IMG/VR virus record: IMGVR_UViG_3300042540_001399
Coordinates: 62,001-126,000 of that record
Direction: 5' to 3' (one strand)
Length of the DNA: 64,000 nucleotides
In this document: one piece after another, positions 8,787 through 63,031 of the stretch
How the letters are laid out: each line of letters begins with the position of its first letter
How positions within the stretch are numbered: position 1 is the first letter of the stretch
The notes under the pieces: model-generated
What the model was told of the DNA's origin: nothing
The model's database searches: none
Seen by the model: only the letters and a program-made list of their open reading frames with translations
Translations under genes and position numbers: made by a program

Positions 8787-8793
8787 TATTTAT
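8787..8793 (+). promoter_or_regulatory. TATTTAT motif, representative of a candidate late promoter class (about 15 copies listed in findings)
   Basis: Recurs in short intergenic gaps upstream of structural or putative late genes. The AT-rich background lowers certainty. Confidence 0.5.
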
Positions 8794-8814
8794 AAAATAA
8801 CAAACTAAAATTAT

Positions 8815-9723
8815 ATGGCAACAGGTACATATGGAACTATAAGACCGGCGGATGTAAGTCCTACTGATGTAGACATAATATTGAATTATACACCATCACG
8901 AGATGTTACAAATGATTTCCAATTAACTAAACTTAATTCATCTGCGGTTTTAACACCATACTTTAACAATGCGAATACTGGTGGAAATGCTGGTATAGAA
9001 ATATTAGGTGGTTTATATAATTTAAGACTACCGGCAAATGTTTTCAATCAACTTGGAATTTACACTTTATATATTAGACCGGCCGAAATTAGAACTAAAA
9101 TAACTGATTGTGGTATTTTAGCCGCACTTCCAAACATAAAAGGTCTTGTTATAGACATAAGTAATGTACCTGTTGCTTTCAGGGACAAATTTGTCAATCA
9201 AGGATTAATTGGATATAGGGTCGAATATCTTCAATCTAATGGTGCTAAAATTCCTAATTTTTTTAGAATTATAACTTCATCATTTTATTGTGAACCTGTT
9301 GTACAAAATACAACAAATACATCAACAAGTACTGTAAGATATCAATATGTCAATGGTGTTACAAATTTAATTTTTTGTACCTTGTCACCATCATCGTCCC
9401 CATCAAATAAACCAAACGCAACACCATTTATTGGGCAACCCGATCAAGACATTATTATAAGTAATACTTTTTTCAATCCTATTACTATGGAAATTGAAAT
9501 GGTTGAACATGATATTTCTACTTTAGCAATTGCATTGTTTGGTAATCAGACTAAGTCTCTTAATGACGGTATCTACACACTTTACGATTCACAAAATAAC
9601 ATTTACAAACAGTACAATTTATTTGAAATTAGAGATCAATACAATGAGTTGTTATATGAAGTTAGACAAGATAGAAATAATAACATTGATTTTAGTAAAA
9701 ACTTTGCAAACATAACACAATAA
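8815..9723 (+). CDS. Putative baseplate/structural protein (302 aa)
   Basis: Own TATTTAT motif. Stop overlaps the start of the baseplate-wedge-like gene. Confidence 0.5.
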   Translation: MATGTYGTIRPADVSPTDVDIILNYTPSRDVTNDFQLTKLNSSAVLTPYFNNANTGGNAGIEILGGLYNLRLPANVFNQLGIYTLYIRPAEIRTKITDCGILAALPNIKGLVIDISNVPVAFRDKFVNQGLIGYRVEYLQSNGAKIPNFFRIITSSFYCEPVVQNTTNTSTSTVRYQYVNGVTNLIFCTLSPSSSPSNKPNATPFIGQPDQDIIISNTFFNPITMEIEMVEHDISTLAIALFGNQTKSLNDGIYTLYDSQNNIYKQYNLFEIRDQYNELLYEVRQDRNNNIDFSKNFANITQ

Positions 9724-12700
9724 TGGCGGTAATAAAATATAAATGGCCACCTCAAACCGACACAGGAGCGAGTACTTTTTCCGACGACTTGGTTGGTGTA
9801 CAACTTGTTGCCGGTGGAGGTTTAACTAACGCTAATTTTGAATTCACAACGGGATTAACGGAAAAACAAAATAGGAAATTTAACATAGGTGCCTTTTCTA
9901 GTCCAATTAGTTTAGATGATTTGGACCTAAAAAGTGTTGAAGAATCAAAAGTTTTAATTGCAAAAAATTTACAGGTATACCCTAATTTTGATTTAAGTCA
10001 AATAACTAATTTTACTTTGTTCGGCTCGTTGACCAAAAGGATATCAACTTCAATAAGTAGAATTATAAATTACTTTCCGGCGGGTATAGAAAGTTTGTCG
10101 CAAAATTTGAATTTCCAAACAGGACTTACCGCGGTAAATATGTATTACGATAAAGTTCTTGATGAAACTTATTTAGAATTACCATTAAACAGAATCAGAA
10201 ATCCTTTTGATATTGATTTTACTACTACAGCTACACGAAATTTTGAACTTAGCGAAATTGAAGTTTCACCCTTAAGAAATCTTACAGTGGAATATCTAAA
10301 CTATTCAATATTTGTTAATAGTTCAGAATATAATGTAATATTCTTAGATCCTGTTGATGATACTGATACTGTGTTAAAACTTTATGTCACTGGTAACCCA
10401 TTCAGTGGATTATCAGCTACGACCTCTGACATAGTGTTAAGACCTAATACTTTTTATACGGAAAAATCTTTCAATGACTTTTTTGATGAGGTTGAAAAGT
10501 TTCTTCTTAATAGATTGATTCTACCTATTTACACTGCGACTTTTCAAGTACCACAAGAAAATGATGATGGAACTTATTCTACAGTTAACCAAACAATAAG
10601 TTGGCCGTTGGACGGTTCATGGAACCTTGATATTAGAACAAATGATTTCGATAAGTATTTGACAACATTGAATACAATTTGTGAAAATTTAGATTCGTAC
10701 AACACAAATTTAATTTCAAGATTTTTGACCACAGGTGCATTAAAAGAATTTGATACAAGTGATAGAAAAATAGAAAAAGTCTTACAAATTTACGGTAGAA
10801 GTTTTGATGAAGTTAGAAAATTTGTTATGTCCTTGGCAAATATGACATCAGTAAATTATAATACTGGCAACGATATTCCATCACAACTTTTGAAAAACTT
10901 AGCAGAAACATTAGGATGGAAAACAAATATTTCTCCAATAAGTAATGAAGGTTTGTTGGATTCAATATTTGGTACTAATCAAGAAAGTAATTTTCCTGGA
11001 TATTCAAGAGCACTTACACCTGATGAAATTAATTATCAATTCTATAAGAATTTAATACTAAATGCGGCATATCTTTTTAAATCTAAAGGTACTAGAAGAT
11101 CCATTGAAATTCTTTTGAGACTTGTTGGTGCGCCAGAAGCCCTAATAGATTTTAACGAATACATATATATTGCTGATGAAAAAATAAACTTATCACAATT
11201 TGATAAACAATATTTAAACATTTCAAGTGGACTTTATGTTCAACAGACCCCTGTATTGGATCCAACGGATATCTTTTCTATCATGGGAGTTCAGTATACT
11301 GGGTTTACCTTACAAACGACTGTAAGTGGTGTATCTACAACTAGATTGGACTATCCTATGGACAATCAAGGGTACCCAACGGCACCACAAGAAAATGATG
11401 GATACTTCTTTCAAATTGGTGGTGGATGGTTTGAATCAACACCTGATCATCACATGCCAGAACAAGTAGTACCTACTAACCAAGTTTTTGTTGGGCAGAA
11501 TCCTAATTATCAGACAGTTTTATTACCGTTTAATTACGGGCAAATATATTTGGATAGATACCGTAAGTTTCCATTTATGAGTGTTGGTTACGGATTAAAC
11601 AAAACTATAGATAATAAAAAAAGTTGGACTATTGATAATGTTGGATTAAGAAAAAGTTCTGACGGAGGGTTCAATGCTTATTATAGGGTTTATGATGAAA
11701 GATATGTTGTAAACGTAAAAAACGTAGATGTATTTCTCAATCCAGCCCAAGGGTTAGCTTACGACGTTTGGTCTATGTCAAGAAGATACAATTACCCAAT
11801 ACCTAATGAAGGATTAGATTATGTAGAACCAACTTATTGTAATCCAAATCCAAATGGACCATATCCAAATAGGGGTGGTATAGATTGGACAGAAATAAAT
11901 CCTAAGCCAAAACAAAAAACATTTTTTGAGTTTGCCCAAACTTTTTGGAAGAACATGATTAATGTAAGGAATAGACAATTTATTACCGATGGTAAAACCG
12001 GTGGTTACCCAACTTTACAATCAATTTATTGGAAATATTTAGAGTCTAATCAAACAATCAATATACCTAATGATAATTTCACATATAGAACAATGATCGA
12101 CTATGTGAATGGTTTAGGGGATTATTGGATTAAACTTGTGGGACAAATGATACCAGCAACAACTTTATTAACATCTGGTGTGAGGTTAGAAAATTCCATA
12201 TTTCATAGACAAAAATTTGTTTGGAGAAGGCAAATGGGATGTCAAATTATACCAGTACCTTGCAAACCTTGTTCTTTAATTGGTCAACTGTTTGCGGTAG
12301 ATTGTCCAATACAATCGGCAACATGTCCTGTTTATCCTTGGGGATCTAACCCTTTAATTACATCTTTTGCGGTTGTACTGAATCAACTTCTACAAAATAA
12401 AGGATTAGTACAACCTAATTGTGACCCAAATACATTGGAAAGTACTTGGTATGTAGACTTAGTTTTAAACGGGGATTTACTATCACACTATGAATTTTTC
12501 ACGGGTTACGGAAATACAAGTCCTACAGCTAGTTATCCGTCAAACACGGTTTGGTTGTCGGCTTTACAGTCTGCTTTAAGTAATTTACAATCAGAAGGAT
12601 TAGATTATGTTATCAACAGTGATGACACTGTCACAATATATAATAGTAACTGTATACCCCTAAGTGTTACCCAAAATTTTGAAATAAATGTTGGGATAAA

Positions 12701-12725
12701 CTTTAATTTACTTTGTATTCAATGA
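9723..12725 (+). CDS. Baseplate wedge-like protein (P2 gpI / T4 gp7-type segment), 1000 aa
   Basis: IPSQLLKNLAETLGWK...AAYLFKSKGTRRSIEILLRLVG resembles the Tail_P2_I pattern (L..LA...G......KGT...I...L..LG). Confidence 0.65.
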   Translation: MAVIKYKWPPQTDTGASTFSDDLVGVQLVAGGGLTNANFEFTTGLTEKQNRKFNIGAFSSPISLDDLDLKSVEESKVLIAKNLQVYPNFDLSQITNFTLFGSLTKRISTSISRIINYFPAGIESLSQNLNFQTGLTAVNMYYDKVLDETYLELPLNRIRNPFDIDFTTTATRNFELSEIEVSPLRNLTVEYLNYSIFVNSSEYNVIFLDPVDDTDTVLKLYVTGNPFSGLSATTSDIVLRPNTFYTEKSFNDFFDEVEKFLLNRLILPIYTATFQVPQENDDGTYSTVNQTISWPLDGSWNLDIRTNDFDKYLTTLNTICENLDSYNTNLISRFLTTGALKEFDTSDRKIEKVLQIYGRSFDEVRKFVMSLANMTSVNYNTGNDIPSQLLKNLAETLGWKTNISPISNEGLLDSIFGTNQESNFPGYSRALTPDEINYQFYKNLILNAAYLFKSKGTRRSIEILLRLVGAPEALIDFNEYIYIADEKINLSQFDKQYLNISSGLYVQQTPVLDPTDIFSIMGVQYTGFTLQTTVSGVSTTRLDYPMDNQGYPTAPQENDGYFFQIGGGWFESTPDHHMPEQVVPTNQVFVGQNPNYQTVLLPFNYGQIYLDRYRKFPFMSVGYGLNKTIDNKKSWTIDNVGLRKSSDGGFNAYYRVYDERYVVNVKNVDVFLNPAQGLAYDVWSMSRRYNYPIPNEGLDYVEPTYCNPNPNGPYPNRGGIDWTEINPKPKQKTFFEFAQTFWKNMINVRNRQFITDGKTGGYPTLQSIYWKYLESNQTINIPNDNFTYRTMIDYVNGLGDYWIKLVGQMIPATTLLTSGVRLENSIFHRQKFVWRRQMGCQIIPVPCKPCSLIGQLFAVDCPIQSATCPVYPWGSNPLITSFAVVLNQLLQNKGLVQPNCDPNTLESTWYVDLVLNGDLLSHYEFFTGYGNTSPTASYPSNTVWLSALQSALSNLQSEGLDYVINSDDTVTIYNSNCIPLSVTQNFEINVGINFNLLCIQ

Positions 12726-18004: not shown

Positions 18005-18027
18005 AATATTTATAAGAAAAAAAATTA

Positions 18028-19494
18028 ATGTCATTTTTAACAGATAGAAATTTTGCTTCAGGTGTTTCGGTTAATGATTTAATTCACATTGTTATAACAG
18101 GTGATACATCACAAAATCCTGCCGGATCATCATATAAAACTACTTTGGGTGATGTAATTTCTTTAGTGACAGGAATTACAGGAAATTATTTACCAATAAG
18201 TGGTGGTACAGTTACGGGCACAACTTTCTTTATCAGTGGTTTATCGGCCAACACTTTTTCGGCATCAACTATTGGTTCATCAGGTAGTTGTGTAGACGAT
18301 TTGTATGTTTCGAATATACATTCATGTTCGCCTTTGAATATAAATCCATTTGACGAAGGTGAAGTTCTGTTTGGGTCCAATAAACAAATTTTTGTTGACT
18401 TAGTTGGTAAAAAAGTTGGATTCAATATGACCCCAACATATAATATTGATGCGATGGGAACTACTAATGGTAGATTTTTCTTTAGAGGTGCGTCCCTTCC
18501 AAGTATAAACATTTCTGGTACAAGTAACTCCTACGTATCCACAAACACTGTGGCAGGAAATGTTGGGTTATTGTCTGTTGCTTTTGGGGAATCATACCCA
18601 TCTAACCTTTATGGTGTTGTATCGGGAAATACTTTACTAACAAACACAAATGAATCAAATGATATGGTTATTTTAACCAATCAAAGTTCAACTAATGATA
18701 AAAATATAAAGTTTTTTGCTGGAAAATCTGCGGATACAAAACCTGATATTATTATTTTGGGTTCAGGATCAGGATTAAAAAGAGGGTATGTTGGTGTTGG
18801 ATTAAATAATCCCCAGGAACACTTACATGTTGATGGAAATTCTATAATCAACCAAGGATTAACCGCGGCAACATTTAATATTTCAACAGCACCTAATATA
18901 GATACAAATGTACCTACAGAATATCTAACAAGAGATGCTTCGACCGGTGAAGTTAAAATCAAACAAATTCCAGGACCAACCGTTTTCGGTTTATTTGCAC
19001 AAACAGGAAACAGTGTGGTTATCAGCGGTACCACAGTTGAATCTACTTTAATTGATGGAGGTGTTGGAACTTTATCTGTTCCGGCAAATGGTTTTTCTAT
19101 TGGGGATAGTTTTAGAGCGGACTTTGGTGGTTTAATGAGTGTAAAACCTGGTGGTGATACTTTAAGAATTAGAATAAAAACTGGTAGTGTTATTTTAGGT
19201 GATACTGGAGTTTTAAGTATACCGGCAGTAACAAACGATGTTTGGCTTTTAAATATAAATTTTACGGTAAGAAAACTTGGGGGACCAACGTTTGCTTCAA
19301 TTGTAAGTTTAGGAAATCTACATGTAATAAAAGCCGCAAGTACAACACCAACAAGTTTTGCCTTTAACACTGTTAACTCATCAACTTTTGATACAACAAT
19401 ATCAAATACACTTGACGTTACCGCCGAATGGGGAAGCAATAGTACTAATAACAAAATATATTCTGATATTTTTGTTCTAAATAAAATATATTAA
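18028..19494 (+). CDS. Tail fibre protein (488 aa)
   Basis: YLPISGGTVTG and GYVGVGLNNPQEHLHVDGN are typical fibre shaft motifs (YLPLSGGTLTG; GNVGIGT..P...LHV.G). Confidence 0.65.
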   Translation: MSFLTDRNFASGVSVNDLIHIVITGDTSQNPAGSSYKTTLGDVISLVTGITGNYLPISGGTVTGTTFFISGLSANTFSASTIGSSGSCVDDLYVSNIHSCSPLNINPFDEGEVLFGSNKQIFVDLVGKKVGFNMTPTYNIDAMGTTNGRFFFRGASLPSINISGTSNSYVSTNTVAGNVGLLSVAFGESYPSNLYGVVSGNTLLTNTNESNDMVILTNQSSTNDKNIKFFAGKSADTKPDIIILGSGSGLKRGYVGVGLNNPQEHLHVDGNSIINQGLTAATFNISTAPNIDTNVPTEYLTRDASTGEVKIKQIPGPTVFGLFAQTGNSVVISGTTVESTLIDGGVGTLSVPANGFSIGDSFRADFGGLMSVKPGGDTLRIRIKTGSVILGDTGVLSIPAVTNDVWLLNINFTVRKLGGPTFASIVSLGNLHVIKAASTTPTSFAFNTVNSSTFDTTISNTLDVTAEWGSNSTNNKIYSDIFVLNKIY

Positions 19495-20507: not shown

Positions 20508-20531
20508 ATGTATTTATAATTAAAATATACA

Positions 20532-22593: not shown

Positions 22594-22621
22594 AAAAAGT
22601 TATTTAATATTTATTATTTAA

Positions 22622-25210
22622 ATGGCATATATAATTAAAAATACATCGGGATTGGTTAACACAAGAGTTACCGATACAGGTAGACAAAAGTTATCACAAG
22701 GTAACTTCAAAGTTGCCTATTTCCAAATTGGGGATAGTGAAATATCATACGATAAATTACCTTCTAATTATAACTTTACAAATTCCTTTGTTTTAGAACC
22801 AGCATTTAATACTCAAAATTCTGCAGGTGTTCCAGAGTCAAATAGACAAAGCATTAAATATCCATACTATGTTGATGGAACTAGTGGATCTACTTATGGA
22901 ATACCTTACATGGATTCTACGATAGATCCTGTTTATAATAGGGCACCACTAAGAGGGTTTTTTACAGGAAACACAACCGCAAGTACAGTCGTTTGGAGTG
23001 CATTAACTAACAATCAATACGTGGTTTCTTCAAACTATATTATTGATATGTCAACTCTAAATGGTACTAATAAAGTTGATTTAATTTATTCTGGATGTAA
23101 TTATACAAATACAAACAAACCATCTATTGGGGATTTAATTACAATATATTATGATGGTTTTGGTGAGTATGACTGTAATTGTGTTAATTTACCAACACCG
23201 ACTCCTACACCTACACCGTCAATCACACCAACCGAAACTATCACACCAACTCCAACACCAAGTATCACACCTAATTATAACCCTTGTGCATCGCCAACCC
23301 CAACACCAACTCCAACAAGGACACCGTGTTTAACACCTACTCCGAGTAGACTTTGTCCTCCACCACCGCCACCAAGTTGTGTTATGTCTATGAATTCATG
23401 TTATCAAATTCTGACATATAGAATAATTGATATATGTGAAAATACTATAACACTTGATAGAAACACACCCGATTTTTGTGGTACAGTAATAACACATTGT
23501 TACGCACGTACATTGATCTATCCGCCAAATATGACTTCTATTTATGATAGTATAACTCCAAGTCCACATTGGGGCGAACAAGTAATCGATTTTGAATCTA
23601 TTTGTGATACAGATCAATTTGATGTGAAAATATGGAACATGAATATTCCATGGACCGAAAATCCCGCTGGTATGATACCTACAAAATATGAAGGATATCA
23701 ATATTTTGGTTCAGTTGATTATATAGGATCAAAAGAATACTTTGGATACAATTCAAATTCAGGACAAACATTTTTTATCAATAATACTTTGAGTGCTGAG
23801 ACTACAGATACTTTTTATTACAATTCTTTAGGTGAAATCGTCAAAGTACAACCCGAAGAACAAAAGGCAATTGCCATCATACATTATACTAATCAAACAA
23901 TTGATTTCTTTTATGGTGAAAAATTTGCACTGGAACCGTATGATCCAAGCAACTTAGACGATACAACAGGACAGGCTAGAAATTTTAGACTTCATATACC
24001 TTGGTTGATGTGGCATAAGAATCCTGAATGTTGTTTTGGTCAAACTTTTTGGGTTGATCCTCCAGGATTTGAAGGTAAAAATCTTTTTGATGTTAGATAT
24101 GTTCAGACAACTAGAAATGATGATATGAATAATCCCGGTATTAGATATTATCATTTGTGGGATACTAATAAAAACAAAAACGGTTTACCTAATCGAATTG
24201 GTAAAGTTTTCCCTGATAGTAAATTAATTATTATTGACGATGAAGAAATAATTGCCGCGATGTCTTATAAGGCAAATAGAAATTGGACTTTGCCGGCACC
24301 TCAATTATCGCTTATAACCCCAAATACTTGTGGATTAGCGTCTTTAACTGCTGATGGGGTTTTGACAGGTCATGGTGAAACTATGTATGTCACTTATAGG
24401 TTTACAAATAAAACTTGTAGTACAAATTCACTTCATTGCAATTACTATGTAAAACTTGTTGGGAATAATAATGATTGTACGCCTAATGTTTCACAAAATG
24501 TTGCCATTAGATTTGGTCGCGAATTTAATTGTTTGGATTATATGATACCAACAACAACGACGACAACGATACCAATATTTACTACTACAACTACAATTCC
24601 ATTCACAACTACAACAACAACAGATCCTTTTCCATTAACAACGACTACAACTTTTTGGCCGTACACCACAAGTACAACAACAATATGCCCACCTTCTTGT
24701 AATATAAATAAAGGTTTCTTTGCTGAATCATTCCAAGTTTTATGTCAGAAAGTGAAAACAGGACAAAGACCGGATCCATCAAGTTGGAAAATAATTGATT
24801 ACACACAAGACTTAGGTAATTTAGTAACACAAGATACTTTGACAAACAATACTTTTGTTATAACGAAAGATCTTTACGATAAGGCTCCATATTACGACTT
24901 GGGTAGTTATATAAACTTGACTAAATTAGGAAATGACAAACCTGATTTAAATTTTGGTGACGAATATTATTTTTACGGTTCCTTTGAATCAGATATAATG
25001 GCAACCATATATCAGATGAAATATAAGATAAATTTAAATTTTACAGAATTTCAAAATTCAACTAACCCAACATGGAAACAAGGAACAAAATCATTCGTAA
25101 CCGAAATTGCATTATTGGATGAGGATAAAGACATTCTTGTAATGTCAAAGTTACAATCACCTGTGTTAAGACAAGGAATACAACAGTATTTAGTCAAACT
25201 TGACTTTTAA
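22622..25210 (+). CDS. Tail/baseplate-fibre junction-like protein with PT, poly-Pro and poly-Thr linkers (862 aa)
   Basis: N-terminal [25 protein letters not shown] and C-terminal [18 protein letters not shown] resemble the two ends of tail-collar fibre (DUF3751-like) domains. Confidence 0.55.
23192..23374 (+). repeat. Pro-Thr and poly-Pro coding repeat
   Basis: [27 protein letters not shown]...[11 protein letters not shown]...CPPPPPPSC. Confidence 0.9.
24548..24690 (+). repeat. Poly-Thr mucin-like coding repeat
   Basis: [48 protein letters not shown]. Confidence 0.9.
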
Positions 25211-28234: not shown

Positions 28235-28281
28235 AATTTTCTGTCTTAAATAAATATAGAAAAATAGAAAAACATGTGAAG

Positions 28282-28312
28282 TTGATAAATTTAAATAATG
28301 TACCTATCTTTT
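28282..28312 (+). promoter_or_regulatory. Candidate middle promoter TTGATA-N17-TATCTTTT
   Basis: Same architecture as the motifs at 31114, 35682 and 48670. Directly upstream of the primase. Confidence 0.55.
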
Positions 28313-30672: not shown

Positions 30673-30710
30673 TTTTTTTAATTATAGGTATATTTATCAA
30701 TAAAAAAAAT

Positions 30711-31064
30711 ATGAAAAATATACTATCAAGTCTAACCACATCAGAAAAAAATAGAATTCTTGAAATGCACAGAAGAGCAACATCAAAATTTTATTTATTT
30801 GAATCAGATATAGATGGTGAAATTTATTGGCAATCTTGTGATCAAGAAATGAATTTATTATCAGATGAATCAAAATCTGGTTTAAAACCTGCGGGGAATG
30901 AAAATGGAAAAGATTTATTTTATTTTGAAATTTTACCCGAAGATAAGGCAAAAAATCCGCAATATGACATACAAGGTTGTGTCGGGATTGAAGGTAAAGA
31001 TAGTAAAGTCTATATTGAAGAATATGATGGTAAAAAAGTTTTAAGACTTTATGAAGGTTTTTAA
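30711..31064 (+). CDS. Hypothetical acidic protein with EKNRILEMH leader
   Basis: Own TATTTAT motif (30691) upstream and a terminator downstream. Confidence 0.6.
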   Translation: MKNILSSLTTSEKNRILEMHRRATSKFYLFESDIDGEIYWQSCDQEMNLLSDESKSGLKPAGNENGKDLFYFEILPEDKAKNPQYDIQGCVGIEGKDSKVYIEEYDGKKVLRLYEGF

Positions 31065-36407: not shown

Positions 36408-36415
36408 TATCTTTG
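36408..36415 (+). promoter_or_regulatory. Bacteroidota-type -7 element (TATCTTTG)
   Basis: TAnnTTTG 18 nt upstream of the ATG at 36434. Confidence 0.55.
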
Positions 36416-37845: not shown

Positions 37846-38646
37846 ATGAAAGACAAAAATGTTGGGGCACCAATAAATCAAGAAGAAATTCAACACTATC
37901 TTAAAGACATAAGAAAAATCAAGGTAATGACTCCTGATCGGGAAAAAGAACTTGCTAAGATTATGAAATCAGAAGGTATTAGTTTAAGACAACGTAAAGA
38001 AATTGAAGAAGAATTACTTAGGGGTAATTTAAGATTTGTTATAACTGTGGCAAAACAGTATCAAAATCAAGGTATGGACCTTTCAGATTTAATTGCTGAA
38101 GGAAACTTTGGATTAATGAAGGCGATCAAAAATTTTGATTGGAACAAAGACTTAAGATTTATTTCCTACGCAGTTTGGTGGGTAAAACAATCAATAATTC
38201 AGTCTCTAAATGACAACGCAAGAACAATAAGACTACCGGTTAATGTTGTACAAGATTTACAACGAGCAAAAAAAGAAGTGGAACAAACAGGGAAAAAATT
38301 AGACGATAAATTTTCTACACTACCATCTATTATTGATTTAGACATGACAATTAATGAAGATGGGGATACATTAATTGATATGATATCAAATCCTGATGCT
38401 GAACAACCAGATTCAGTATTTAACACAAAAGATATTTTAAAAGATAAACTAATGTCTCTTTTAAATGTTTTAGACGACCGTGAAAAAACAATCATTGGTG
38501 ATTACTTTGGTCTTACCGGCACTCCAAGAACTTTAGAAGATATTGGATCAGATTTCGGACTTACAAAAGAAAGGGTCAGACAGATTAAAGAAAAGGCATT
38601 ACGTAGACTTAGAAACGATAGTTCAGAATTATTTGATTATTTATAA
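37846..38646 (+). CDS. Sigma-70 family RNA polymerase sigma factor, similar to the Bacteroidota primary sigma (no region 1.1)
   Basis: NLRFVITVAKQYQNQG...LIAEGNFGLMKA...FISYAVWWVKQSIIQSL...IRLPVN, and region 4 TLEDIG..FGLTKERVRQIKEKALRRLR. Confidence 0.93.
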   Translation: MKDKNVGAPINQEEIQHYLKDIRKIKVMTPDREKELAKIMKSEGISLRQRKEIEEELLRGNLRFVITVAKQYQNQGMDLSDLIAEGNFGLMKAIKNFDWNKDLRFISYAVWWVKQSIIQSLNDNARTIRLPVNVVQDLQRAKKEVEQTGKKLDDKFSTLPSIIDLDMTINEDGDTLIDMISNPDAEQPDSVFNTKDILKDKLMSLLNVLDDREKTIIGDYFGLTGTPRTLEDIGSDFGLTKERVRQIKEKALRRLRNDSSELFDYL

Positions 38647-39102: not shown

Positions 39103-39127
39103 ACCCCCACCTTAAATGGGGGTTTTT
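39103..39127 (+). terminator. Intrinsic terminator
   Basis: accccca-ccttaaa-tgggggt followed by a T-run. Confidence 0.8.
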
Positions 39128-39164
39128 CTTTATCTTTTATATTTATTAAGTATAGTTTAAAGAT

Positions 39165-42939: not shown

Positions 42940-42966
42940 TCATATATTTATAATAAAAACAAAAAA

Positions 42967-44397
42967 ATGAAAAACTATTCTAGATTTCTAAATGAAAAAT
43001 ATAATACGACAAAATTTAATAGACCTGGAAAGTCTTTTGATTATGTTGAAGAAGAAGAAACATCCGAAGGAAATGCTTTCACAAAAATGTTGAAAAACAC
43101 AAAAAAAGGGGATAAATTTTCTTTGAATGGTAAAGAATATACTGATAGATCATCATTAGATGAAGAACCAATTTATGAAATTGAAGTCAACGATGGTGAA
43201 ATGTGTGAATGTGGTGGTCAAATGATGGAAGGTGAATGTACAGAATGTGGATACATGAAAGAATCTGAAATGAATGAAAAACTTCATGGAAATCAATTCA
43301 AATTGGACAAAAACAAAAACGGTAAAATTGATAAGTCAGACTTTGATTTATTAAGGAAAAGTAAAAAAAATATGAACGAAATTTCTGATGAGTTTGATTA
43401 TGAAATGCAAGAACCATGTCCTCATTGTAATGGTACGGGATATAACGAGTTTGATGATGTTGAATGCGAATGGTGTGATGGGACTGGTGAATATGATGAA
43501 TATGGGGATTTAAAAATTTCTGACGACATGCCAGATTATAAAACCAATTGGAAAATGCCTGAAGACGATTTTAATACAGATAGTAGTGATATTGTTTATG
43601 AAATAGAAATTGACGAAGACATGTATGATAACGCCGAAAAAACAACAGATTTTTGGAATCCTGGAAAAAAAGAATTGAGAACTAAAATGTATGAATACGA
43701 AATTTTTAATGAAAGATTAGGTAGATCAATTCGACTTACAGAAGAACAAGTCGTTAATTTAATTGAAAATTTGGCGGAAGAAAAAATGAAACCCGCCAAA
43801 AAAACTAGAGGATACACTGAATATGAAAGATCATTCAAAAAATCTGGAGACGAAAATCAAGACTATTATAAAGAGGTTGGGCAAAAAATGAAAAAATATG
43901 CTAAAGATGGGTCAATGGAAGATTTCACTATGGACGCAAAACATTTTCCTATGGGTAATGGTGAATTGAAAAAGATGGATAAAATGGCATATGTTCCATC
44001 AGACAGTGTGGCGGAATATGTAGAAAACTTTACAGCGGCGGCACTTGAAAACATTGATTATGATGAATTTGCTCCTAATGAAGAATGGGTAAAAGACAAC
44101 ATTGTCGGTTCTTCAAGAACAGGTAACAATCCTGAATGGGGCAATGCGGTCGAAACACCAACAAACAAAAAAAGAAACGAAATTAGAGAAAAAAATATGT
44201 TGGCTCAAATAAAAAGGAAGGCATATAATAAATCCGCACAACCTGTGGTTAAAGATAGACCAGGAAATGATGATGCATCCGATTTACTAAATAAAGTTGA
44301 AAAAGGTGAAAAGGCCGTATCAAAAAAGTCAAAAAAAGTTAATGAAAATATTGAAAGAATTGCTGGTTTGATTACCTACAATTCCAAAACACAATAA
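42967..44397 (+). CDS. Acidic mosaic protein, putative prohead core/internal head protein (476 aa)
   Basis: N-terminus MKNYSRFLNE, CECGG..CTECG, EF-hand-like DKNKNGKIDKSDF, two CxxCxGxG repeats, many (I/L/M)xE sites, own TATTTAT motif. Confidence 0.5.
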   Translation: MKNYSRFLNEKYNTTKFNRPGKSFDYVEEEETSEGNAFTKMLKNTKKGDKFSLNGKEYTDRSSLDEEPIYEIEVNDGEMCECGGQMMEGECTECGYMKESEMNEKLHGNQFKLDKNKNGKIDKSDFDLLRKSKKNMNEISDEFDYEMQEPCPHCNGTGYNEFDDVECEWCDGTGEYDEYGDLKISDDMPDYKTNWKMPEDDFNTDSSDIVYEIEIDEDMYDNAEKTTDFWNPGKKELRTKMYEYEIFNERLGRSIRLTEEQVVNLIENLAEEKMKPAKKTRGYTEYERSFKKSGDENQDYYKEVGQKMKKYAKDGSMEDFTMDAKHFPMGNGELKKMDKMAYVPSDSVAEYVENFTAAALENIDYDEFAPNEEWVKDNIVGSSRTGNNPEWGNAVETPTNKKRNEIREKNMLAQIKRKAYNKSAQPVVKDRPGNDDASDLLNKVEKGEKAVSKKSKKVNENIERIAGLITYNSKTQ

Positions 44398-48442: not shown

Positions 48443-48465
48443 TAGTAATAAATAGCACAAAAAAT

Positions 48466-48490
48466 AAAAAAGGGGACAAAGTCCCCCTTT
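48466..48490 (-). terminator. Intrinsic terminator
   Basis: ggggac-aaa-gtcccc stem followed by a T-run on the minus strand. Confidence 0.8.
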
Positions 48491-49544: not shown

Positions 49545-49582
49545 TTTTTTGACTTGTTGAAATATTTATTAATAAAAAAATT

Positions 49583-51520
49583 ATGGAATTAGTAAAGTTA
49601 TTATCCAATATAGTAAAAGAAAACACCAAAGTTAAAAATAGTTTATTATTAGAATATCCAGAATCAACAATTAAAAGGTTAGTCCTTAAGTTTAGTGGAA
49701 GTACAGAAGACACGGTAGATCAAATTAGACAAACCATTTCTGATTTTGAAAGATTCAAAAATACCTTGGTAGGAGCTGAAAGGGACATCTTCACATATGA
49801 TTATCAAAAATTAAAGGATCTTGTAAAGTCTAAAAGTGAAAGTCAAAAATCTAAAAGAACTTTTGATGATGTTTTTAAAACATTCATGGAAAAAAATGCT
49901 GGTGCAGACAAAAGACTTACTAAATTGAATATTAAAAAGTTTTTTGAAATGAAAGCTTTAGATCCAAAAAGATTCAGAAAAGACATTTTGGACATGACAT
50001 CTATGGAATTGTCATCTTTGGTTAGACGTGAATTTGAAAATTTCATGAAAGAAAAATTAACAGAAAAGTTAATAAAAGAAAATCCTCAAGAAAATATTGA
50101 ACAAATAGTCAATAGGGTTGATAGATATGTTGCAAACTACACATTAGTCCCTATAAATACAAAACCTGCAGGTATGATGAATTTTGTTGAATTCGAACAT
50201 GTTGTGGATGTTTTACCAATGGAAGACGAATATAAAATTCCTGAAATTGATGTTTCTGATGTTGATGTTGTTTTTGAAGACGACAGCATTCTGATATTCA
50301 ATCCTGATCAAAAACACAAGTGTATCAATATACGAAAAAAGTTTGCCCCTGATAGAAGATGGTGTACATCTTGGGAAGGGTCATCGAATTATTTTTATAA
50401 TTATAGGCTTAGACAAAATCTTACATTATACTATGTTATAAATAAAAATTTAAATGAAAGCGATGTAAATTTTGCGGTTGTTATACTGGTTGATTATGAT
50501 TGGAGAAAAAATGTACAATTTAGATTAGCCGATGGTACAAACTCAGGAAAATACGCCGGAGCAACCGTTTTACCTTGGAGTGAAATAACTAAAAAAATAC
50601 CAAATTTAATCGGTAAAGAAAAATATTTTGTACCGCATCCATACTCTTCTGAACAACAAAGTATGATGATGAGCTTCGAAAGAAAAAATTTGACATCTAC
50701 CGACGCAATAAAAGAACTTGGTTCTGAAGAAAACGTTGAATTATGGTTAGAATTAAGGACTCCTGATTTAACTCAGATCGCTACTGGCCCAATAATTTGG
50801 AAAAATTTTACACCTTATTTGAGACATAAATACATTGGTATGGACGGTAAATTGAATGCTGAAATGTTGAAATTTACTGATAAGGAAAGTAAAGATTACT
50901 ATCTTACTAAAAAACGTAAATCACTTTTGTTAACTGACATTGACAAATTGACAGAGGCGGATGTTTCTTTGATTATGAGTGATGAAATGTCACCATATCA
51001 TGAAGCACTTATTAATTCATATGCAAAACAATTGGCAAAGAAAAATATTGATCTTAGTTATCTACCGATATCATTCCCTAATGATTCCGCAGCTAAATTT
51101 GCCACCATGTTTGGTTTAGACACATTGTTTTCTATTTTACCTGAAGATACAAGATTCCTTAATTTGGAAAACAAATCAGACAAACAGGAACCATTTGACG
51201 TACCCGCAAACATATCAAGATTCAAAAATTTGAAAACATTTGTTGCTGACAATATTATCAAAAGTTTACCTGAATCAATTGGTGAATGTAAAATGTTGTC
51301 TTTCCTAAATGTCACAGGAAATAAAGAATTAAAAACTTTACCAAAGTCACTAGCAACTTTGTATTGTCTCAACTTTATTTCAGTTATGGATTCTGGCATT
51401 GATATTGATAACCTACCAAAGGAGCTATTCAAACACATGATACCTACTGAAGATTTTTTCATAGTCAATTTCCCTGAAGAGCTCAAAGTTAAAAGAGGTT
51501 GTAAATCTAACGAAGACTAA
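49583..51520 (+). CDS. Large protein with central WCTS module and C-terminal leucine-rich repeats
   Basis: RWCTSW...YFYNY...LYYVINK, then LKTFVADNIIKSLPESIGECKMLSFLNVTGNKELKTLPKSLATL LRR units. Confidence 0.65.
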   Translation: MELVKLLSNIVKENTKVKNSLLLEYPESTIKRLVLKFSGSTEDTVDQIRQTISDFERFKNTLVGAERDIFTYDYQKLKDLVKSKSESQKSKRTFDDVFKTFMEKNAGADKRLTKLNIKKFFEMKALDPKRFRKDILDMTSMELSSLVRREFENFMKEKLTEKLIKENPQENIEQIVNRVDRYVANYTLVPINTKPAGMMNFVEFEHVVDVLPMEDEYKIPEIDVSDVDVVFEDDSILIFNPDQKHKCINIRKKFAPDRRWCTSWEGSSNYFYNYRLRQNLTLYYVINKNLNESDVNFAVVILVDYDWRKNVQFRLADGTNSGKYAGATVLPWSEITKKIPNLIGKEKYFVPHPYSSEQQSMMMSFERKNLTSTDAIKELGSEENVELWLELRTPDLTQIATGPIIWKNFTPYLRHKYIGMDGKLNAEMLKFTDKESKDYYLTKKRKSLLLTDIDKLTEADVSLIMSDEMSPYHEALINSYAKQLAKKNIDLSYLPISFPNDSAAKFATMFGLDTLFSILPEDTRFLNLENKSDKQEPFDVPANISRFKNLKTFVADNIIKSLPESIGECKMLSFLNVTGNKELKTLPKSLATLYCLNFISVMDSGIDIDNLPKELFKHMIPTEDFFIVNFPEELKVKRGCKSNED

Positions 51521-52634: not shown

Positions 52635-52670
52635 ATAAAGTGGTGACTTTTTCACCACTTTATTTATTTT
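52635..52670 (+). terminator. Intrinsic terminator
   Basis: ataaagtggtga-ctttt-tcaccactttat followed by a T-rich tail. Confidence 0.75.
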
Positions 52671-53781: not shown

Positions 53782-53813
53782 AAAAAACCACCTATAAACG
53801 GTGGTTTTTTTTT
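53781..53813. terminator. Bidirectional intrinsic terminator
   Basis: aaaaaaaccacc-tataaac-ggtggttttttt between convergent genes. Confidence 0.85.
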
Positions 53814-54507
53814 AAATTAATATTACGTGTTCTAACATATCTTGAATCAAGTATGGTTTTTCTTTGTTTTGAGTTAACAGATCCTCAAACAAATTATAAT
53901 TATTAATTCTTTCGTTAAATTTATCTAAATCAAAATCGAATACATCTAAAATCAAAGATTTGATTTTTTCTTTGGGTATATTTGAATTTGAAATTATGTC
54001 AATATCAAAGTCTTCATCACTATTAAGTTTTTTGGTAAAATAAAATTCCAAATTATTTACACCTAACAAATTATACATGTGGTTAAACATATAGTTTGAA
54101 TAATAAACTATAGACCGACCACAATTCAAACTATGTCCATAAGGAAATTCAGACACTGTAAATAGATTTGTCACAGGTTCAGACTTACTTGTGAAAACAT
54201 TTTTATCTAAAGAAATCCAAACATCTTCCAAAACATCAAAATCTGATCCATACGAAAGTAAATCAATAATATTCATATGGTCTACGTTTGCATCTTCTAA
54301 TTCGGACGAATATTCTTTGAAGAATTCTTCTTTTATTTTTTGTAAATCCAAGATATCTTTGCTTGAACTTTTACCCGAAACAACAACAAAATTTATGCAA
54401 TCACATACTTGAATTATACTTTTTTCTGACTTGTTAATTTTTGATAAAATGTAGTCAGAAAATAAATTTACAATAAATCTTTTTGTTTTTTTATTTATTA
54501 ATCTCAT
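53812..54507 (-). CDS. Degenerate S-adenosylmethionine synthetase (MetK)-like protein
   Basis: IVNLFSDYILSKI...IIQVCDCINFVVVSGKSSSKDILDLQKI resembles MetK IADQISDAVLDAI...[29 protein letters not shown]. It lacks GHPDK and is only 231 aa. Confidence 0.4.
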   Translation of the reverse strand: MRLINKKTKRFIVNLFSDYILSKINKSEKSIIQVCDCINFVVVSGKSSSKDILDLQKIKEEFFKEYSSELEDANVDHMNIIDLLSYGSDFDVLEDVWISLDKNVFTSKSEPVTNLFTVSEFPYGHSLNCGRSIVYYSNYMFNHMYNLLGVNNLEFYFTKKLNSDEDFDIDIISNSNIPKEKIKSLILDVFDFDLDKFNERINNYNLFEDLLTQNKEKPYLIQDMLEHVILI

Positions 54508-54556
54508 AATATATTTTTTTACAATTGATATGAGATTTATTTGATATTATAAATAG

Positions 54557-56691: not shown

Positions 56692-56704
56692 ATATCATAA
56701 ATAC

Positions 56705-56729
56705 AAAAAAGGTGGAAAAATTCCACCTT
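56705..56729 (-). terminator. Intrinsic terminator
   Basis: aggtggaa-aaa-ttccacct stem followed by a T-run on the minus strand. Confidence 0.75.
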
Positions 56730-56754
56730 AATTTCTTTGGCCAAAGGAATTAAA

Positions 56755-56901: not shown

Positions 56902-56983
56902 GGTCAATTGTTTTTATAAGGTTTATTTATTTATAAATATCAACACTAAGACTATTTTGTAAATCACAAATATTTATGATTGT

Positions 56984-58513
56984 ATGAAAAAGAAATTAAT
57001 TCTAACCGAAACACAATTTAAAACTGTTTTACAAAGGATTGTAGAAGATGATGTTGTTGAAAAAATATATTTAACACCTGAAGAATATATGCAGTATTTG
57101 AAACAAGTAGGGTTTATGGCACACGCTATTCCATATTTACCAAAATTTACAGGAAAAAAAATTGTGGTAAAAGGGAACTTGAACCTTTCAGATCTCAGTG
57201 GTAAAAATAAAATTTACAAGTTAGGGAATATAGAAGTAACAGGTAATTTAGATGCTTCTAAAACAGGAATTAAAAATTTCGATGATGTTGTTGTTGGTGG
57301 AAGAATATCATTTTGGGATACACCTTATGAAAAGGAACTTATAAGAAAAAAACAACTTGCAAAAAGAAACGAACAGGATGGTAAAAGGGATAGAAATGAA
57401 TGGAGTTTAGATGGTACTGATGAAGAAGGTGAAAAGGCTAACGCAGCGTTTGAATATGCCGTTAATGAAGGGTATTTAGAAGGTATAACTGATGATGAAC
57501 AAGATAGAATATCTGAAATAAATAGAGAAATTGAAGAATTAGAAGAAGAACAAGAAAATTTGGATGCTGGTGATGAAAATTATAGTGAAAAGTTTGATGA
57601 AATTACTGATAAACAAATGGAACTTGAAGATGAAAAAAATGAAATATTATCTGATAGAGTTGATGTTTACGATTTATATAATATCGGAAGACATTATGAT
57701 CTAACAAATTTTGAATCTTTATCCACAGGCCATCAATATGCGGTTGGTACTGAAGATGAATGTGACGAGTCATTAAAAATGTACTATGAAGAAATGGTCG
57801 ATAGTATGGAACATTATTTTGATAATAATTTTATTTCAAGATATGTTGATGGGGATGAAGTGGCAGAGTACTTCGAAGATTCTGTAAGTGAATGGGTTAG
57901 GGATGAACCAGATAGTTATGGGGTCGAAAAACAATTAAGTAAAGATCAAGAAAAAGAAATTTGGGTTTTAGAAATGGAAAAATGGGTATATGAAAACGAA
58001 GGTGTTAGATTTCCGATAAAATACCCAACAATGGAAGAAAATGGTAAAGTATTTGATTTTTGGGATGAAAATGAAGAACATGAGTTTCAATATAGAAATG
58101 AAAGTTCAGACCCATCCAAAAGTCATTGGGTGTTATATAAAGATGGGCAAGTTGTCCCACCTCACCAAATATATGATGATGAAGAAACCCAAGAACAAAA
58201 AGATGATCGTGAAAGTAGAATATCCGATATTGATTATGAAATAGAAGAAATAAAAGATAATCCTGATGGTGAACCATCAGAAGAAGATATAGAATATGCG
58301 ATAGAAAGTTATATTGATGACAACATTAAAAACGATCCTGTAAGTTTTTTACAACAGATGGGATATGACGACTATTCGAATTTTGTAAATAAACAGGAAA
58401 TGTTAGATGATCTTGTAAGTGATGGTGAATATGGTTCGTTAAATGGTTACGACGGTAGTTATGATTCTGTTAGAATTAACGGTACATACTATATAGTAAT
58501 GAGAATTGATTAA
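56984..58513 (+). CDS. Highly acidic hypothetical protein (509 aa)
   Basis: MKKKLILTETQFKTVLQRIVE leader, D/E-rich body, TATTTAT at 56971. Confidence 0.7.
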   Translation: MKKKLILTETQFKTVLQRIVEDDVVEKIYLTPEEYMQYLKQVGFMAHAIPYLPKFTGKKIVVKGNLNLSDLSGKNKIYKLGNIEVTGNLDASKTGIKNFDDVVVGGRISFWDTPYEKELIRKKQLAKRNEQDGKRDRNEWSLDGTDEEGEKANAAFEYAVNEGYLEGITDDEQDRISEINREIEELEEEQENLDAGDENYSEKFDEITDKQMELEDEKNEILSDRVDVYDLYNIGRHYDLTNFESLSTGHQYAVGTEDECDESLKMYYEEMVDSMEHYFDNNFISRYVDGDEVAEYFEDSVSEWVRDEPDSYGVEKQLSKDQEKEIWVLEMEKWVYENEGVRFPIKYPTMEENGKVFDFWDENEEHEFQYRNESSDPSKSHWVLYKDGQVVPPHQIYDDEETQEQKDDRESRISDIDYEIEEIKDNPDGEPSEEDIEYAIESYIDDNIKNDPVSFLQQMGYDDYSNFVNKQEMLDDLVSDGEYGSLNGYDGSYDSVRINGTYYIVMRID

Positions 58514-58515
58514 TC

Positions 58516-58548
58516 TTTACTGCCAAGTAATTTATTGTTATAATTTTG
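58516..58548 (+). promoter_or_regulatory. Candidate promoter (TTTACT-N17-TATAAT overlapping TAATTTTG)
   Basis: Fits both a sigma70-like and a Bacteroidota -7 reading. Confidence 0.45.
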
Positions 58549-58552
58549 TCAG

Positions 58553-59323: not shown

Positions 59324-59324
59324 A

Positions 59325-61096: not shown

Positions 61097-61207
61097 AAAA
61101 GTTGAAATCAGAAATTATTTATCGAGTAATTTTTTTTATAATCATGATTGGTACTATAACTTTGACATGGACTTTAATATACAAGTTAATAAAAATAATT
61201 TTTTAAA

Positions 61208-62056: not shown

Positions 62057-62058
62057 GT

Positions 62059-62085
62059 AAACCCCCTTAAATGGGGGTTTTTTTA
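62059..62085. terminator. Intrinsic terminator between convergent genes
   Basis: aaaccccc-ttaaat-gggggttt followed by a T-run. Confidence 0.85.
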
Positions 62086-62622: not shown

Positions 62623-62623
62623 A

Positions 62624-62941
62624 CTATTTTTCCGATTTGACTATAACATTTCTGGCGTACATATTAAAAATTGCAACACCAATTGAATCTTCATAAACAG
62701 TGTAATTACCATTATTCTTATCAATTATGATTAAGTGGTTATTTTCATCAATTGCCAAATTAACCTGTGACTTGTCCAAAGAAATCATTTCTATGGTTGG
62801 TGATTTGGGACCATAAATTCTGTGGTAAAGATAACCAACAGAAAACCCACTAACAATGGAAAGTGAAAGTACAGTTATGACTGTGACTTTTTTGATCATT
62901 GGTTTTGAATTCTCGATTAAAGCTTTGATTTTTTCTTTCAT
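62624..62941 (-). CDS. Single-TM membrane protein
   Basis: VTVITVLSLSIVSGFSVGYLY. Co-transcribed with the SLT gene. Confidence 0.65.
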   Translation of the reverse strand: MKEKIKALIENSKPMIKKVTVITVLSLSIVSGFSVGYLYHRIYGPKSPTIEMISLDKSQVNLAIDENNHLIIIDKNNGNYTVYEDSIGVAIFNMYARNVIVKSEK

Positions 62942-62967
62942 AATATATTTTTTTTATTGGTTTGATA

Positions 62968-62999
62968 CAAATATAATAATTTTATCAACAATTTACAAA
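62968..62999 (-). promoter_or_regulatory. Bacteroidota sigmaA-type promoter TTTG-N20-TATATTTG
   Basis: Both elements at canonical spacing. Confidence 0.7.
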
Positions 63000-63031
63000 A
63001 TTTAATCTTCAACAATCGATATTTATGTTAT

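What the first reader, a model, noticed from the sequence alone, without database searches (positions are those of the whole stretch)
8787..63026. Third motif, TATTTAT, marks structural and scattered single genes (candidate late promoter), often right after a terminator
Seen on the plus strand at 8787, 18007, 20511, 22608, 30691, 39140, 42945, 49563, 56971 and 63020. Seen on the minus strand at 28250, 48448, 54549, 56697 and 56933. All lie within about 45 nt upstream of a start codon. At 39140, 48448 and 56697 the motif directly follows an intrinsic terminator. Established: T4 late promoters are a single AT-rich -10-only element (TATAAATA). Caveat: the 7-mer is expected by chance dozens of times in DNA this AT-rich, so positional enrichment must be tested.
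Basis: partly seen in the sequence, partly recalled or inferred. Interest (0 to 1): 0.6.

Follow-up and report, generated by a model that had tools for sequence, protein, structure and literature searches.

The report
Phage-specific TATTTAT promoter, T4-late-like
TATTTAT is very probably the core of a phage-specific, "-10-only" promoter in an uncultivated jumbo phage of Bacteroidota; it resembles the T4 late promoter, many of its sites should give leaderless mRNAs, and the genome encodes a divergent gp55-like sigma factor that could read it.

Summary
All 15 listed sites exist, and two more were missed (38638+, 52661+). The raw count is at chance (59 vs 54), but position is not. Genome-wide (274 kb), 92 of 274 copies lie sense-oriented within 50 nt upstream of ORFs. 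The exact 7-mer is 26-fold enriched 3-19 nt before starts, while no one-mismatch variant exceeds 4.7-fold. Spacing to ATG is bimodal (4-7 and 12-18 nt), and both classes place an A 5-7 nt after the motif. Orthologous intergenic regions in related phages keep only this block. Sense-strand copies inside genes are depleted. Bacteroidota chromosomes show no such signal; there, and at about 30 phage sites, the host box TAnnTTTG with a -33 TTG is used instead. TATTTAT has no -33 element.

The phage encodes a sigmaA-like sigma (window 37846-38646) and, outside the window, a 249-aa factor whose best structural match is T4 gp55.

Best reading: a phage-sigma-dependent, T4-late-like promoter (TATwwAT), often producing leaderless mRNAs. 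"Late/structural only" is unproven, because DnaB and RNR are also driven by it. Which sigma reads it, and the start sites themselves, are inferred. No read data could be obtained.

The parts
8787..8793 (+). TATTTAT site, 21 nt before ATG of ORF 8815-9723
18007..18013 (+). TATTTAT site, long class (14 nt) before ORF 18028-19494
20511..20517 (+). TATTTAT site, 14 nt before the GTG start at 20532 (supports that start)
22608..22614 (+). TATTTAT site, short class (7 nt) before ORF 22622-25210
28250..28256 (-). TATTTAT site, 15 nt before ORF 28234-28019(-), which is followed by the 538-aa ORF 28017-26401(-). TATATTTAT is kept in all 25 distinct orthologous regions
30691..30697 (+). TATTTAT site, long class (13 nt) before ORF 30711-31064
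38638..38644 (+).
39104..39128 (+). Intrinsic-terminator-like hairpin plus T-run ending 11 nt before the 39140 motif
39140..39146 (+). TATTTAT site, 18 nt before ORF 39165-40271, followed by the amidase gene 40271-40864. ATATTTAT is the only conserved intergenic block, and exact TATTTAT is kept in 40 of 44 distinct orthologous regions
42945..42951 (+). TATTTAT site, long class (15 nt) before ORF 42967-44397
48448..48454 (-). TATTTAT site, short class (5 nt) before ORF 48442-47936(-). Terminator-like hairpin plus T-run on the minus strand at 48459-48487
49563..49569 (+). TATTTAT site, long class (13 nt) before ORF 49583-51520
52661..52667 (+).
54549..54555 (-). TATTTAT, 41 nt before ORF 54507-53812(-). 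Outside the two spacing classes, so a weaker candidate
56697..56703 (-). TATTTAT site, short class (5 nt) before ORF 56691-55549(-). Terminator-like hairpin plus T-run on the minus strand at 56705-56727
56933..56939 (-). TATTTAT, 31 nt before the small ORF 56901-56755(-). Outside the two spacing classes, so a weaker candidate
56971..56977 (+). TATTTAT site, short class (6 nt) before ORF 56984-58513, divergent from 56933(-)
63020..63026 (+). TATTTAT site, short class (5 nt) before ORF 63032 (runs past the window end)
37846..38646 (+). Phage sigmaA-like sigma factor (266 aa; regions 1.2, 2 and 4), one of two candidate readers
36408..36415 (+). Host-type -7 box TATCTTTG, 18 nt before ORF 36434, heading the unit that contains the sigma gene

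Best explanation
TATTTAT (extended form A-TATTTAT, then 4-6 nt, then an A) is the core of a phage-specific promoter class in a lineage of uncultivated 250-360 kb phages of Bacteroidota. It acts as a -10-type, '-10-only' element. Host core RNA polymerase carrying a phage-encoded sigma melts the DNA there and starts at the A that lies 5-7 nt downstream. In the short class (motif-N4-7-ATG) that A is the A of the start codon, so the mRNA is leaderless. In the long class (motif-N12-18-ATG) transcription starts in an invariant A-run and gives a 7-12 nt A-rich leader. Both suit a host phylum that translates without Shine-Dalgarno sequences. The favoured reader is the 249-aa gp55-like factor at genome 6422-7171(-), which would make this a re-tuned version of the T4 late system. 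The window's sigmaA-like factor would then serve the TTG-containing promoters. Shown: positional enrichment, strictness, orientation, conservation, absence from host-type DNA, and the presence of both sigma genes. Inferred: that it is a promoter, where transcription starts, which sigma reads it, and its timing.
For: Position and strictness: 12.5-fold upstream enrichment, rank 1 of 128 AT-only 7-mers. 26-fold for the exact word against at most 4.7-fold for every one-mismatch variant. Bimodal spacing. Flanking information (A at -1, upstream T-tract) only at gene-proximal copies. It marks operon heads: median upstream gap is 53 nt against 4 nt; it occurs at 75 of 162 large gaps but only 13 of 174 small ones. 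Start-site signature: in the short class T precedes the ATG in 25 of 32 cases against 101 of 223 (p=5.5e-4), and all 32 use ATG; in the long class A is found at +6 after the motif in 38 of 39. Orientation: the sense word is peaked, the T4-oriented complement is flat. Selection: 64 intragenic sense copies against 99.7 +/- 9.6 expected; antisense 85 against 94.2 +/- 8.7. Footprints: 40 of 44, 25 of 25 and 38 of 43 distinct orthologous upstream regions keep the word while the flanks diverge. The same enrichment appears in a clade whose factor is only 36-50% identical (15.5-fold), and in a complete 288-kb genome with no alignable DNA (10.3-fold, same two peaks). Phage-specific: in 1.14 Mb of Bacteroidota DNA, TAnnTTTG is enriched (5.6-fold, 271:113) and TATTTAT is not (39:29, no peak). 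Architecture: TAnnTTTG and TATATTT sites have TTG at spacer 19-20 (10 of 24; 4 of 11), while TATTTAT has none (at most 4 of 80). In 14 sites a terminator stem ends 5-25 nt upstream, leaving no room for another promoter. Readers: the sigmaA-like gene. For the gp55-like factor: top structural match is T4 gp55 at Z 9.3, 2.6 A over 96 residues, followed by sigma domain 2 structures; PHROG top hit is 'late sigma transcription factor'; the deeper profile hits SigA at E=0.0047 and sigmaA by hhalign at E=7.7e-4. T4 analogy: TATAAATA lies at -13 to -6 and is read by gp55 (PMC1524935), and TATTTAT matches TATAAAT at 5 of 7 positions.
Against: There are no transcript data. Strict spacing to the ATG is unusual for promoters and could also suit an RNA-level signal. 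The factor-to-motif link is by analogy only. Both sigmas co-occur in every complete relative tested, so co-occurrence cannot separate them. Sequence similarity of the 249-aa factor to gp55 itself is weak (E 0.08-0.9), and Z 9.3 is below the level the tool calls safe for helical folds. No gp45-type clamp domain was found. The factor has an extra C-terminal, possibly sigma-4-like, domain that gp55 lacks. The motif also drives DnaB and RNR, so 'late' may be wrong. The true host is unknown.
Confidence: 0.7

Rival explanations
1. The element is a promoter, but it is read by the window's sigmaA-like sigma (37846-38646), not by the gp55-like factor. This would be an early-made replacement sigma with altered -10/-7 specificity.
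For: The gene sits in a unit headed by a host-type TATCTTTG box, so it should be made early. It keeps the melting residues (YAVWW) but has lineage-fixed changes in regions 1.2, 2.4 and 3.0, the parts that read the -10/-7 element and discriminator. It is a core gene of the lineage, at 46-54% identity in distant complete genomes.
Against: Its region 4.2 recognition helix is almost identical to that of host sigmaA, yet TATTTAT sites lack the -33 TTG that TAnnTTTG and TATATTT sites have. The invariant positions do not fit the T-12/A-11/T-7 register of sigmaA-type boxes (PMC6847099).
Confidence: 0.25
2. TATTTAT is a variant host promoter read by the host's own primary sigma.
For: It has the same distance to leaderless ATGs as the host box TAnnTTTG and shares the leading TA and a T at position 5. 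The actual host is unknown.
Against: There is no positional peak or strand bias in 1.14 Mb of Bacteroidota DNA, and none within 20 nt of starts in the low-GC subset. It lacks G-5 and the -33 TTG, which the phage's own host-type promoters do have. All seven bases are strictly required.
Confidence: 0.05
3. It acts in RNA (UAUUUAU), as a translation enhancer or ribosome-binding aid, or as a processing site.
For: Tight, bimodal spacing to the start codon. The host phylum has no Shine-Dalgarno and uses A/U-rich initiation regions. Sense-strand depletion inside genes fits any sense-strand signal.
Against: It is almost absent from genes inside operons (13 of 174 small-gap genes), although those also need translation. 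In 14 sites a terminator ends 5-25 nt upstream, so the word would not be transcribed from upstream. The Y(-1)/A(+1) signature and the invariant A-run at a fixed distance fit a start site. Orthologues switch between the 4-nt and 15-nt spacing while keeping the word.
Confidence: 0.05
4. It is the promoter of a phage-encoded RNA polymerase.
For: Jumbo phages and crAss-like Bacteroidota phages often encode their own RNAPs. Several giant ORFs (3394, 2135, 1819 and 1612 aa) have no family match.
Against: No hit to RNAP beta-prime (PF00623) or single-subunit RNAP (PF00940), and no DFDGD-type catalytic motif in any large ORF. Two sigma-type factors are encoded, which implies use of the host core enzyme.
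Confidence: 0.04

Closest known systems
Bacteriophage T4 late promoters (TATAAATA at -13 to -6) read by gp55 with gp33 and the gp45 clamp
   Same: A single, short, strictly conserved AT-only box with no -35 partner. The distance to the inferred start is the same. 5 of 7 bases are shared (TATwwAT). It precedes baseplate, sheath, head-decoration and lysis genes. The phage encodes a factor whose best structural match is gp55.
   Different: The central AA is TT. The T4-oriented word shows no signal here. The factor is 249 aa with an extra C-terminal domain, and its sequence link to gp55 is only borderline. No gp45-type clamp domain or gp33 was found. The host phylum is Bacteroidota. About 35 sites are placed to give leaderless mRNAs. 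It also drives DnaB and RNR.
Bacteroidota sigmaA promoters (-33 TTTG / -7 TAnnTTTG; PMC6847099)
   Same: The leading TA and the distance to the start site are the same. The phage itself uses about 30 such promoters, several exactly 4 nt before an ATG.
   Different: TATTTAT has A where T-7 is invariant, no G-5, and no -33 TTG. It is not enriched upstream of Bacteroidota genes.
Diverged late promoters with a diverged gp55 in T4-like phage Aeh1 (PMC1524935)
   Same: It is a precedent for a gp55-type factor and its late box changing together.
   Different: Aeh1 is a recognisable T4-like phage of Aeromonas with an easily detected gp55. Here both the factor and the phage are far more distant.

Membership tests
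T4-type late promoter / gp55 system | Short, strictly conserved AT-rich -10-region box with no -35 element | tested here: met
   The exact 7-mer is enriched 26-fold against at most 4.7-fold for all one-mismatch variants. No TTG peak at any spacer.
T4-type late promoter / gp55 system | Consensus TATAAATA | tested here: not met
   The consensus is (A)TATTTAT, 5 of 7 identical to TATAAAT. TATAAATA/ATAAATA in the sense orientation shows no positional peak.
T4-type late promoter / gp55 system | Box at -13 to -6 relative to the transcription start | not testable with these tools
   This is only inferred. An A lies 5-7 nt after the motif in both classes and T at -1 is enriched. No read data were available.
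T4-type late promoter / gp55 system | Phage-encoded gp55-family sigma | tested here: inconclusive
   Top fold match is T4 gp55 at Z 9.3. phrog_234 'late sigma' at E 0.095, or 2.6e-4 per genome. PDB profile hit to gp55 at E 0.08-0.9, but SigA at E 0.0047 with the deeper profile. Sigma-family region 2 is well supported; gp55 subfamily membership is not proven.
T4-type late promoter / gp55 system | gp45 sliding clamp and gp33 co-activator | tested here: inconclusive
   PF09116 (gp45 C-domain) found nothing. gp33 was not searched for. Divergent homologues could be missed.
T4-type late promoter / gp55 system | Late timing, dependent on replication | not testable with these tools
   No expression data. 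The gene content is mixed: baseplate, sheath and amidase genes, but also DnaB and RNR.
Bacteroidota sigmaA -33/-7 promoter | -7 box TAnnTTTG (T-12, A-11, T-8, T-7, T-6, G-5) | tested here: not met
   The motif has A at the T-7 position and W at G-5.
Bacteroidota sigmaA -33/-7 promoter | -33 TTG about 19-20 nt upstream | tested here: not met
   At most 4 of 80 at any spacer, against 10 of 24 for the phage's TAnnTTTG sites.
Bacteroidota sigmaA -33/-7 promoter | Enriched upstream of genes in Bacteroidota chromosomes | tested here: not met
   39 sense against 29 antisense with no peak in 1.14 Mb. TAnnTTTG gives 271:113 with a peak.
Leaderless-mRNA promoters | Start codon at the transcription start; AUG required | tested here: inconclusive
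   The geometry fits: 32 short-class sites, all ATG, with the A of the ATG 5-8 nt after the box and T at -1 in 25 of 32. The 5' ends were not observed.

The most novel reading that the evidence does not exclude
A large, unrecognised family of gp55-like sigma factors (1,402 sequence clusters) directs a re-tuned T4-style late promoter (TATTTAT) across a lineage of 250-360 kb Bacteroidota phages. These phages place the box so that dozens of genes are expressed as leaderless mRNAs, in a phylum whose own mRNAs are mostly leadered and lack Shine-Dalgarno sequences.
Probability: 0.4. Interest if true: 0.7.

Novelty: new variant of a known kind. Interest (0 to 1): 0.6.

Why it matters
Almost nothing is known about how phages of Bacteroidota, a dominant phylum in lakes, oceans and guts, programme transcription apart from the crAss-like phages with their own polymerase. 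This finding offers three things. First, it gives a precise, testable promoter definition (ATATTTAT-N4-5-A) that annotates about a quarter of the genes of a whole lineage of jumbo phages and corrects some start codons. Second, it names two candidate phage sigma factors, one from a large uncharacterised family whose closest structural match is T4 gp55. That would extend the T4 late-transcription design far beyond the T4 superfamily. Third, it suggests that these phages rely heavily on leaderless or near-leaderless mRNAs in a host that does not use Shine-Dalgarno pairing, which makes an open question about translation initiation in this phylum directly testable. A strict 7-bp orthogonal promoter with its own sigma would also be a useful genetic part for Bacteroidota.

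Tried and rejected
1. **Chance from AT-richness.** Rejected by comparison with all AT-only 7-mers and all one-mismatch variants.
2. **T4 box on the other strand.** Rejected because ATAAATA/TATAAATA in the sense orientation is flat.
3. **Near-identical cultured phage.** None found by megablast. tblastn with either factor found no close cultured relative.
5. **Complex prediction** (factor domain with a Flavobacterium beta-prime clamp segment).
6. **Separating the two sigmas by co-occurrence.** This failed. Both are present in complete distant genomes. Two incomplete records lacked the sigmaA-like gene, but that is uninformative.
7. **Reaching very distant factor clades.** P0147, P0108 and P0016 gave no viral contigs, and look-ups by identity gave mostly 1-2 kb contigs. 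Those contigs do show TATTTAT before the next gene, but that is anecdotal.
8. **hhalign of the shallow factor alignment against sigmaA.** Not significant. It became marginal only with the deeper alignment.
9. **Hallmark late genes.** Pfam searches for T4 capsid, portal and terminase found nothing, so those genes could not be placed.
10. **Terminator association as a defining feature.** Not significant against other gaps (14 of 80 against 9 of 79).
11. **Batch scans.** The alignments A1-A3 hold unrelated proteins and served only as containers for batch scanning. The operon model behind the sets is rough.

Full report
**Context.** The window is bases 88638-152637 of a single 274,138-bp IMG/VR virus record. 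It has 31% G+C, CheckV completeness of 93%, and 22 tRNA genes at 248.5-254.7 kb. A simple longest-ORF gene model gives 336 genes covering 94% of the DNA. Few proteins match any family. No Shine-Dalgarno signal exists: G is depleted before starts, and A is enriched at -11 to -14 and at -3. That is the Bacteroidota mode of initiation (PMC6847099). SprB and CHU_C (type IX secretion) domains in phage proteins point the same way, as does the nearest cellular relative of its sigma factor.

- Genome-wide, 92 of 274 copies lie in the sense orientation within 50 nt upstream of an ORF start. That is a 12.5-fold enrichment, first among all 128 AT-only 7-mers, with 30 copies antisense.
- Within 3-19 nt of starts the exact word is enriched 26-fold. 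None of its 21 single-mismatch variants exceeds 4.7-fold, which is the level of AT-rich words in general.
- The distance from the motif end to the ATG is bimodal: 4-7 nt (33 sites) and 12-18 nt (39 sites).
- Only the gene-proximal copies carry flanking information: A at -1 in 72%, a T-tract 11-14 nt upstream, and A-rich sequence downstream.
- The word marks heads of gene groups. The median upstream gap is 53 nt against 4 nt for genes without it. It occurs at 75 of 162 gaps of at least 25 nt but at only 13 of 174 smaller gaps.
- In the window, two sites were missed: 38638 and 52661.
- A terminator-like hairpin precedes 14 of 80 sites, not more than at other gaps (9 of 79). Where one is present, its stem ends 11-17 nt before the motif in 10 of 14 cases, so its U-run coincides with the upstream T-tract.

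**Is it functional?** Three phylogenetic footprints say yes.
- Upstream of the orthologue of ORF 39165, 44 distinct sequences from related uncultivated phages share only (G/A)ATATTTAT and the start codon.
- Upstream of ORF 28234(-), all 25 variants keep TATATTTAT, although orthologues switch between the short and long spacing.
- Downstream of the gp55-like gene, 38 of 43 variants keep the word, 33 of them exactly 4 nt from the ATG.

The same enrichment and spacing recur elsewhere:
- in 80 loci around the sigma gene;
- in a clade whose factor is only 36-50% identical (15.5-fold);
- genome-wide in a complete 288-kb relative with no alignable DNA (10.3-fold, both peaks).

Inside genes, sense-strand copies are depleted (64 against 99.7 +/- 9.6 by codon shuffling). 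Antisense copies are not (85 against 94.2 +/- 8.7).

**What kind of signal is it?** The evidence fits a promoter core rather than an RNA element.
- Both spacing classes reduce to one rule: an A lies 5-7 nt after the motif. In the short class it is the A of the ATG. All 32 use ATG, and T precedes it in 25 of 32 against 101 of 223 other genes (p = 5.5e-4). In the long class, positions +5 to +8 are almost invariably A, with 38 of 39 at +6.
- That is the distance between the T4 late box (-13 to -6; PMC1524935), or the Bacteroidota -7 box (G at -5), and the start site. It comes with the usual pyrimidine(-1)/purine(+1) preference.
- Internal operon genes, which also need translation, lack the word.
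- Terminators immediately upstream leave no room for another promoter.

**Is it the host's own promoter?** No.
- The phage does carry about 30 canonical host-type boxes (TAnnTTTG). Ten of 24 have TTG 19-20 nt upstream, and eight lie exactly 4 nt before an ATG.
- A minor class, TATATTT, also has TTG at spacer 20 in 4 of 11 sites.
- TATTTAT sites have no TTG peak at any spacer.
- In 1.14 Mb of Bacteroidota chromosomal DNA, TAnnTTTG is enriched upstream of genes (5.6-fold, 271 sense against 113 antisense, peak at 15-30 nt). TATTTAT is not (39 against 29, no peak).

**Who reads it?** No phage RNA polymerase was detected. Two sigma-type genes were.
- **The sigmaA-like protein (window 37846-38646).** It has 266 aa with regions 1.2, 2 and 4 and is about 40% identical to Bacteroidota sigmaA over its full length. 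It has lineage-fixed changes in regions 1.2, 2.4 and 3.0 but an almost unchanged region 4.2 helix. It lies in a unit headed by a host-type box at 36408.
- **The 249-aa protein at genome 6422-7171(-), outside the window.** It gives a weak Sigma70_r2 hit. Its top PHROG hit is 'late sigma transcription factor' (E 0.095; 2.6e-4 in a genome-restricted search, and the only place found). T4 gp55 is the second-best PDB profile hit. An AlphaFold model (pLDDT 70.7) has T4 gp55 as its best match among 48,161 chains (Z 9.3, 2.6 A over 96 residues), followed almost only by sigma domain 2 structures. The C-terminal domain weakly resembles region 4.
- **Its family.** It has 1,402 cluster representatives. A deeper profile hits SigA in the PDB at E = 0.0047 and sigmaA by hhalign at E = 7.7e-4, in the correct register.
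- **My preference.** TATTTAT is strict, -10-only and matches the T4 box at 5 of 7 positions, while the sigmaA-like protein keeps a -33-reading helix for which TTG-bearing promoters exist. I therefore favour the gp55-like factor as reader, at roughly 2:1. This is analogy, not proof. Both genes co-occur in all complete relatives tested.

**Timing.** Units headed by TATTTAT include baseplate wedge, tape measure, Hoc-like, tail lysozyme and amidase genes. The tail sheath has the word 37 nt upstream. So does a DnaB-like helicase followed by RNR. PolB, primase, ThyA and the gp55-like gene itself lie in units without it. 'Phage-sigma-dependent, not early' is a safer label than 'late'.

**Limits.**
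- The gene and operon models are simple.
- The host is unknown.
- I found no description of this motif, or of a gp55-type factor in Bacteroidota phages, in the held literature.

Noticed in passing
window 25930, 36408, 51847, 58541, 61157 (+) and 62968 (-): Canonical Bacteroidota host-type -7 boxes (TAnnTTTG). Genome-wide there are about 30, and 10 of 24 have TTG 19-20 nt upstream. Eight lie exactly 4 nt before an ATG (e.g. 58541 TAATTTTGtcagATG), which would put the A of the ATG at +1, giving leaderless mRNAs from host-type promoters too.
   Followed up: partly
genome 6422-7171 (-), outside the window (L083:6422-7171:-): A 249-aa divergent sigma/gp55-like factor from a family of 1,402 cluster representatives with no Pfam model. 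It has no cultured-phage homologue apart from one weak hit in Microcystis phage Mel-JY01.
   Followed up: yes
window 28257-28300, between divergent ORFs 28234(-) and 28318(+): A second conserved block, ATCAACT[TA]CACAAGTTTTT (minus-strand reading), lies about 10 nt upstream of the 28250(-) motif in all 25 orthologous variants. It could be an operator or an upstream promoter element. A conserved CTATATT/TATCTTT box serves the divergent gene.
   Followed up: no
window 19518, 31137, 35705 (+) and 46826 (-): A minor third promoter-like class, (C)TATATTT(T/A), lies 5-8 nt before ATGs. Four of 11 genome-wide sites have TTG exactly 20 nt upstream. This class heads the replication-gene cluster that ends with the gp55-like gene, and it may be the target of the sigmaA-like phage sigma.
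   Followed up: partly
window 20532 and 38660: Motif spacing suggests start-codon choices. The GTG at 20532 (14 nt after the motif) is preferred over the ATG at 20604. The ATG at 38660 is preferred over the upstream TTG at 38543 for the Lar-like ORF.
   Followed up: partly
whole genome: There are no Shine-Dalgarno sequences at all, but A-rich Kozak-like initiation regions instead. There are 22 tRNA genes at 248.5-254.7 kb. Phage proteins carry SprB repeats and CHU_C type IX secretion signals, which supports a Bacteroidota host.
   Followed up: partly
G001 (IMGVR_UViG_3300001336_000001, 287,855 bp, terminal repeats): In this distant complete relative another word, TTGTCTAATTA, is the most enriched upstream 7-mer family (about 27-fold, 25 of 81). 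It probably combines the tail of TAnnTTTG with a conserved leader. This genome and G002 carry two sigmaA-like genes each.
   Followed up: no
L099 (RFNS01000300.1, 3.3 kb, labelled Alphaproteobacteria MAG): This contig encodes a sigma 67% identical to the phage's. It is most likely a fragment of a related phage binned into a bacterial MAG.
   Followed up: no
window 53812-54507 (-): A 231-aa ORF contains the pentapeptide DFDID, which is the catalytic motif of crAss-like virion RNAPs. The protein is far too small for that, so this is taken as chance.
   Followed up: no
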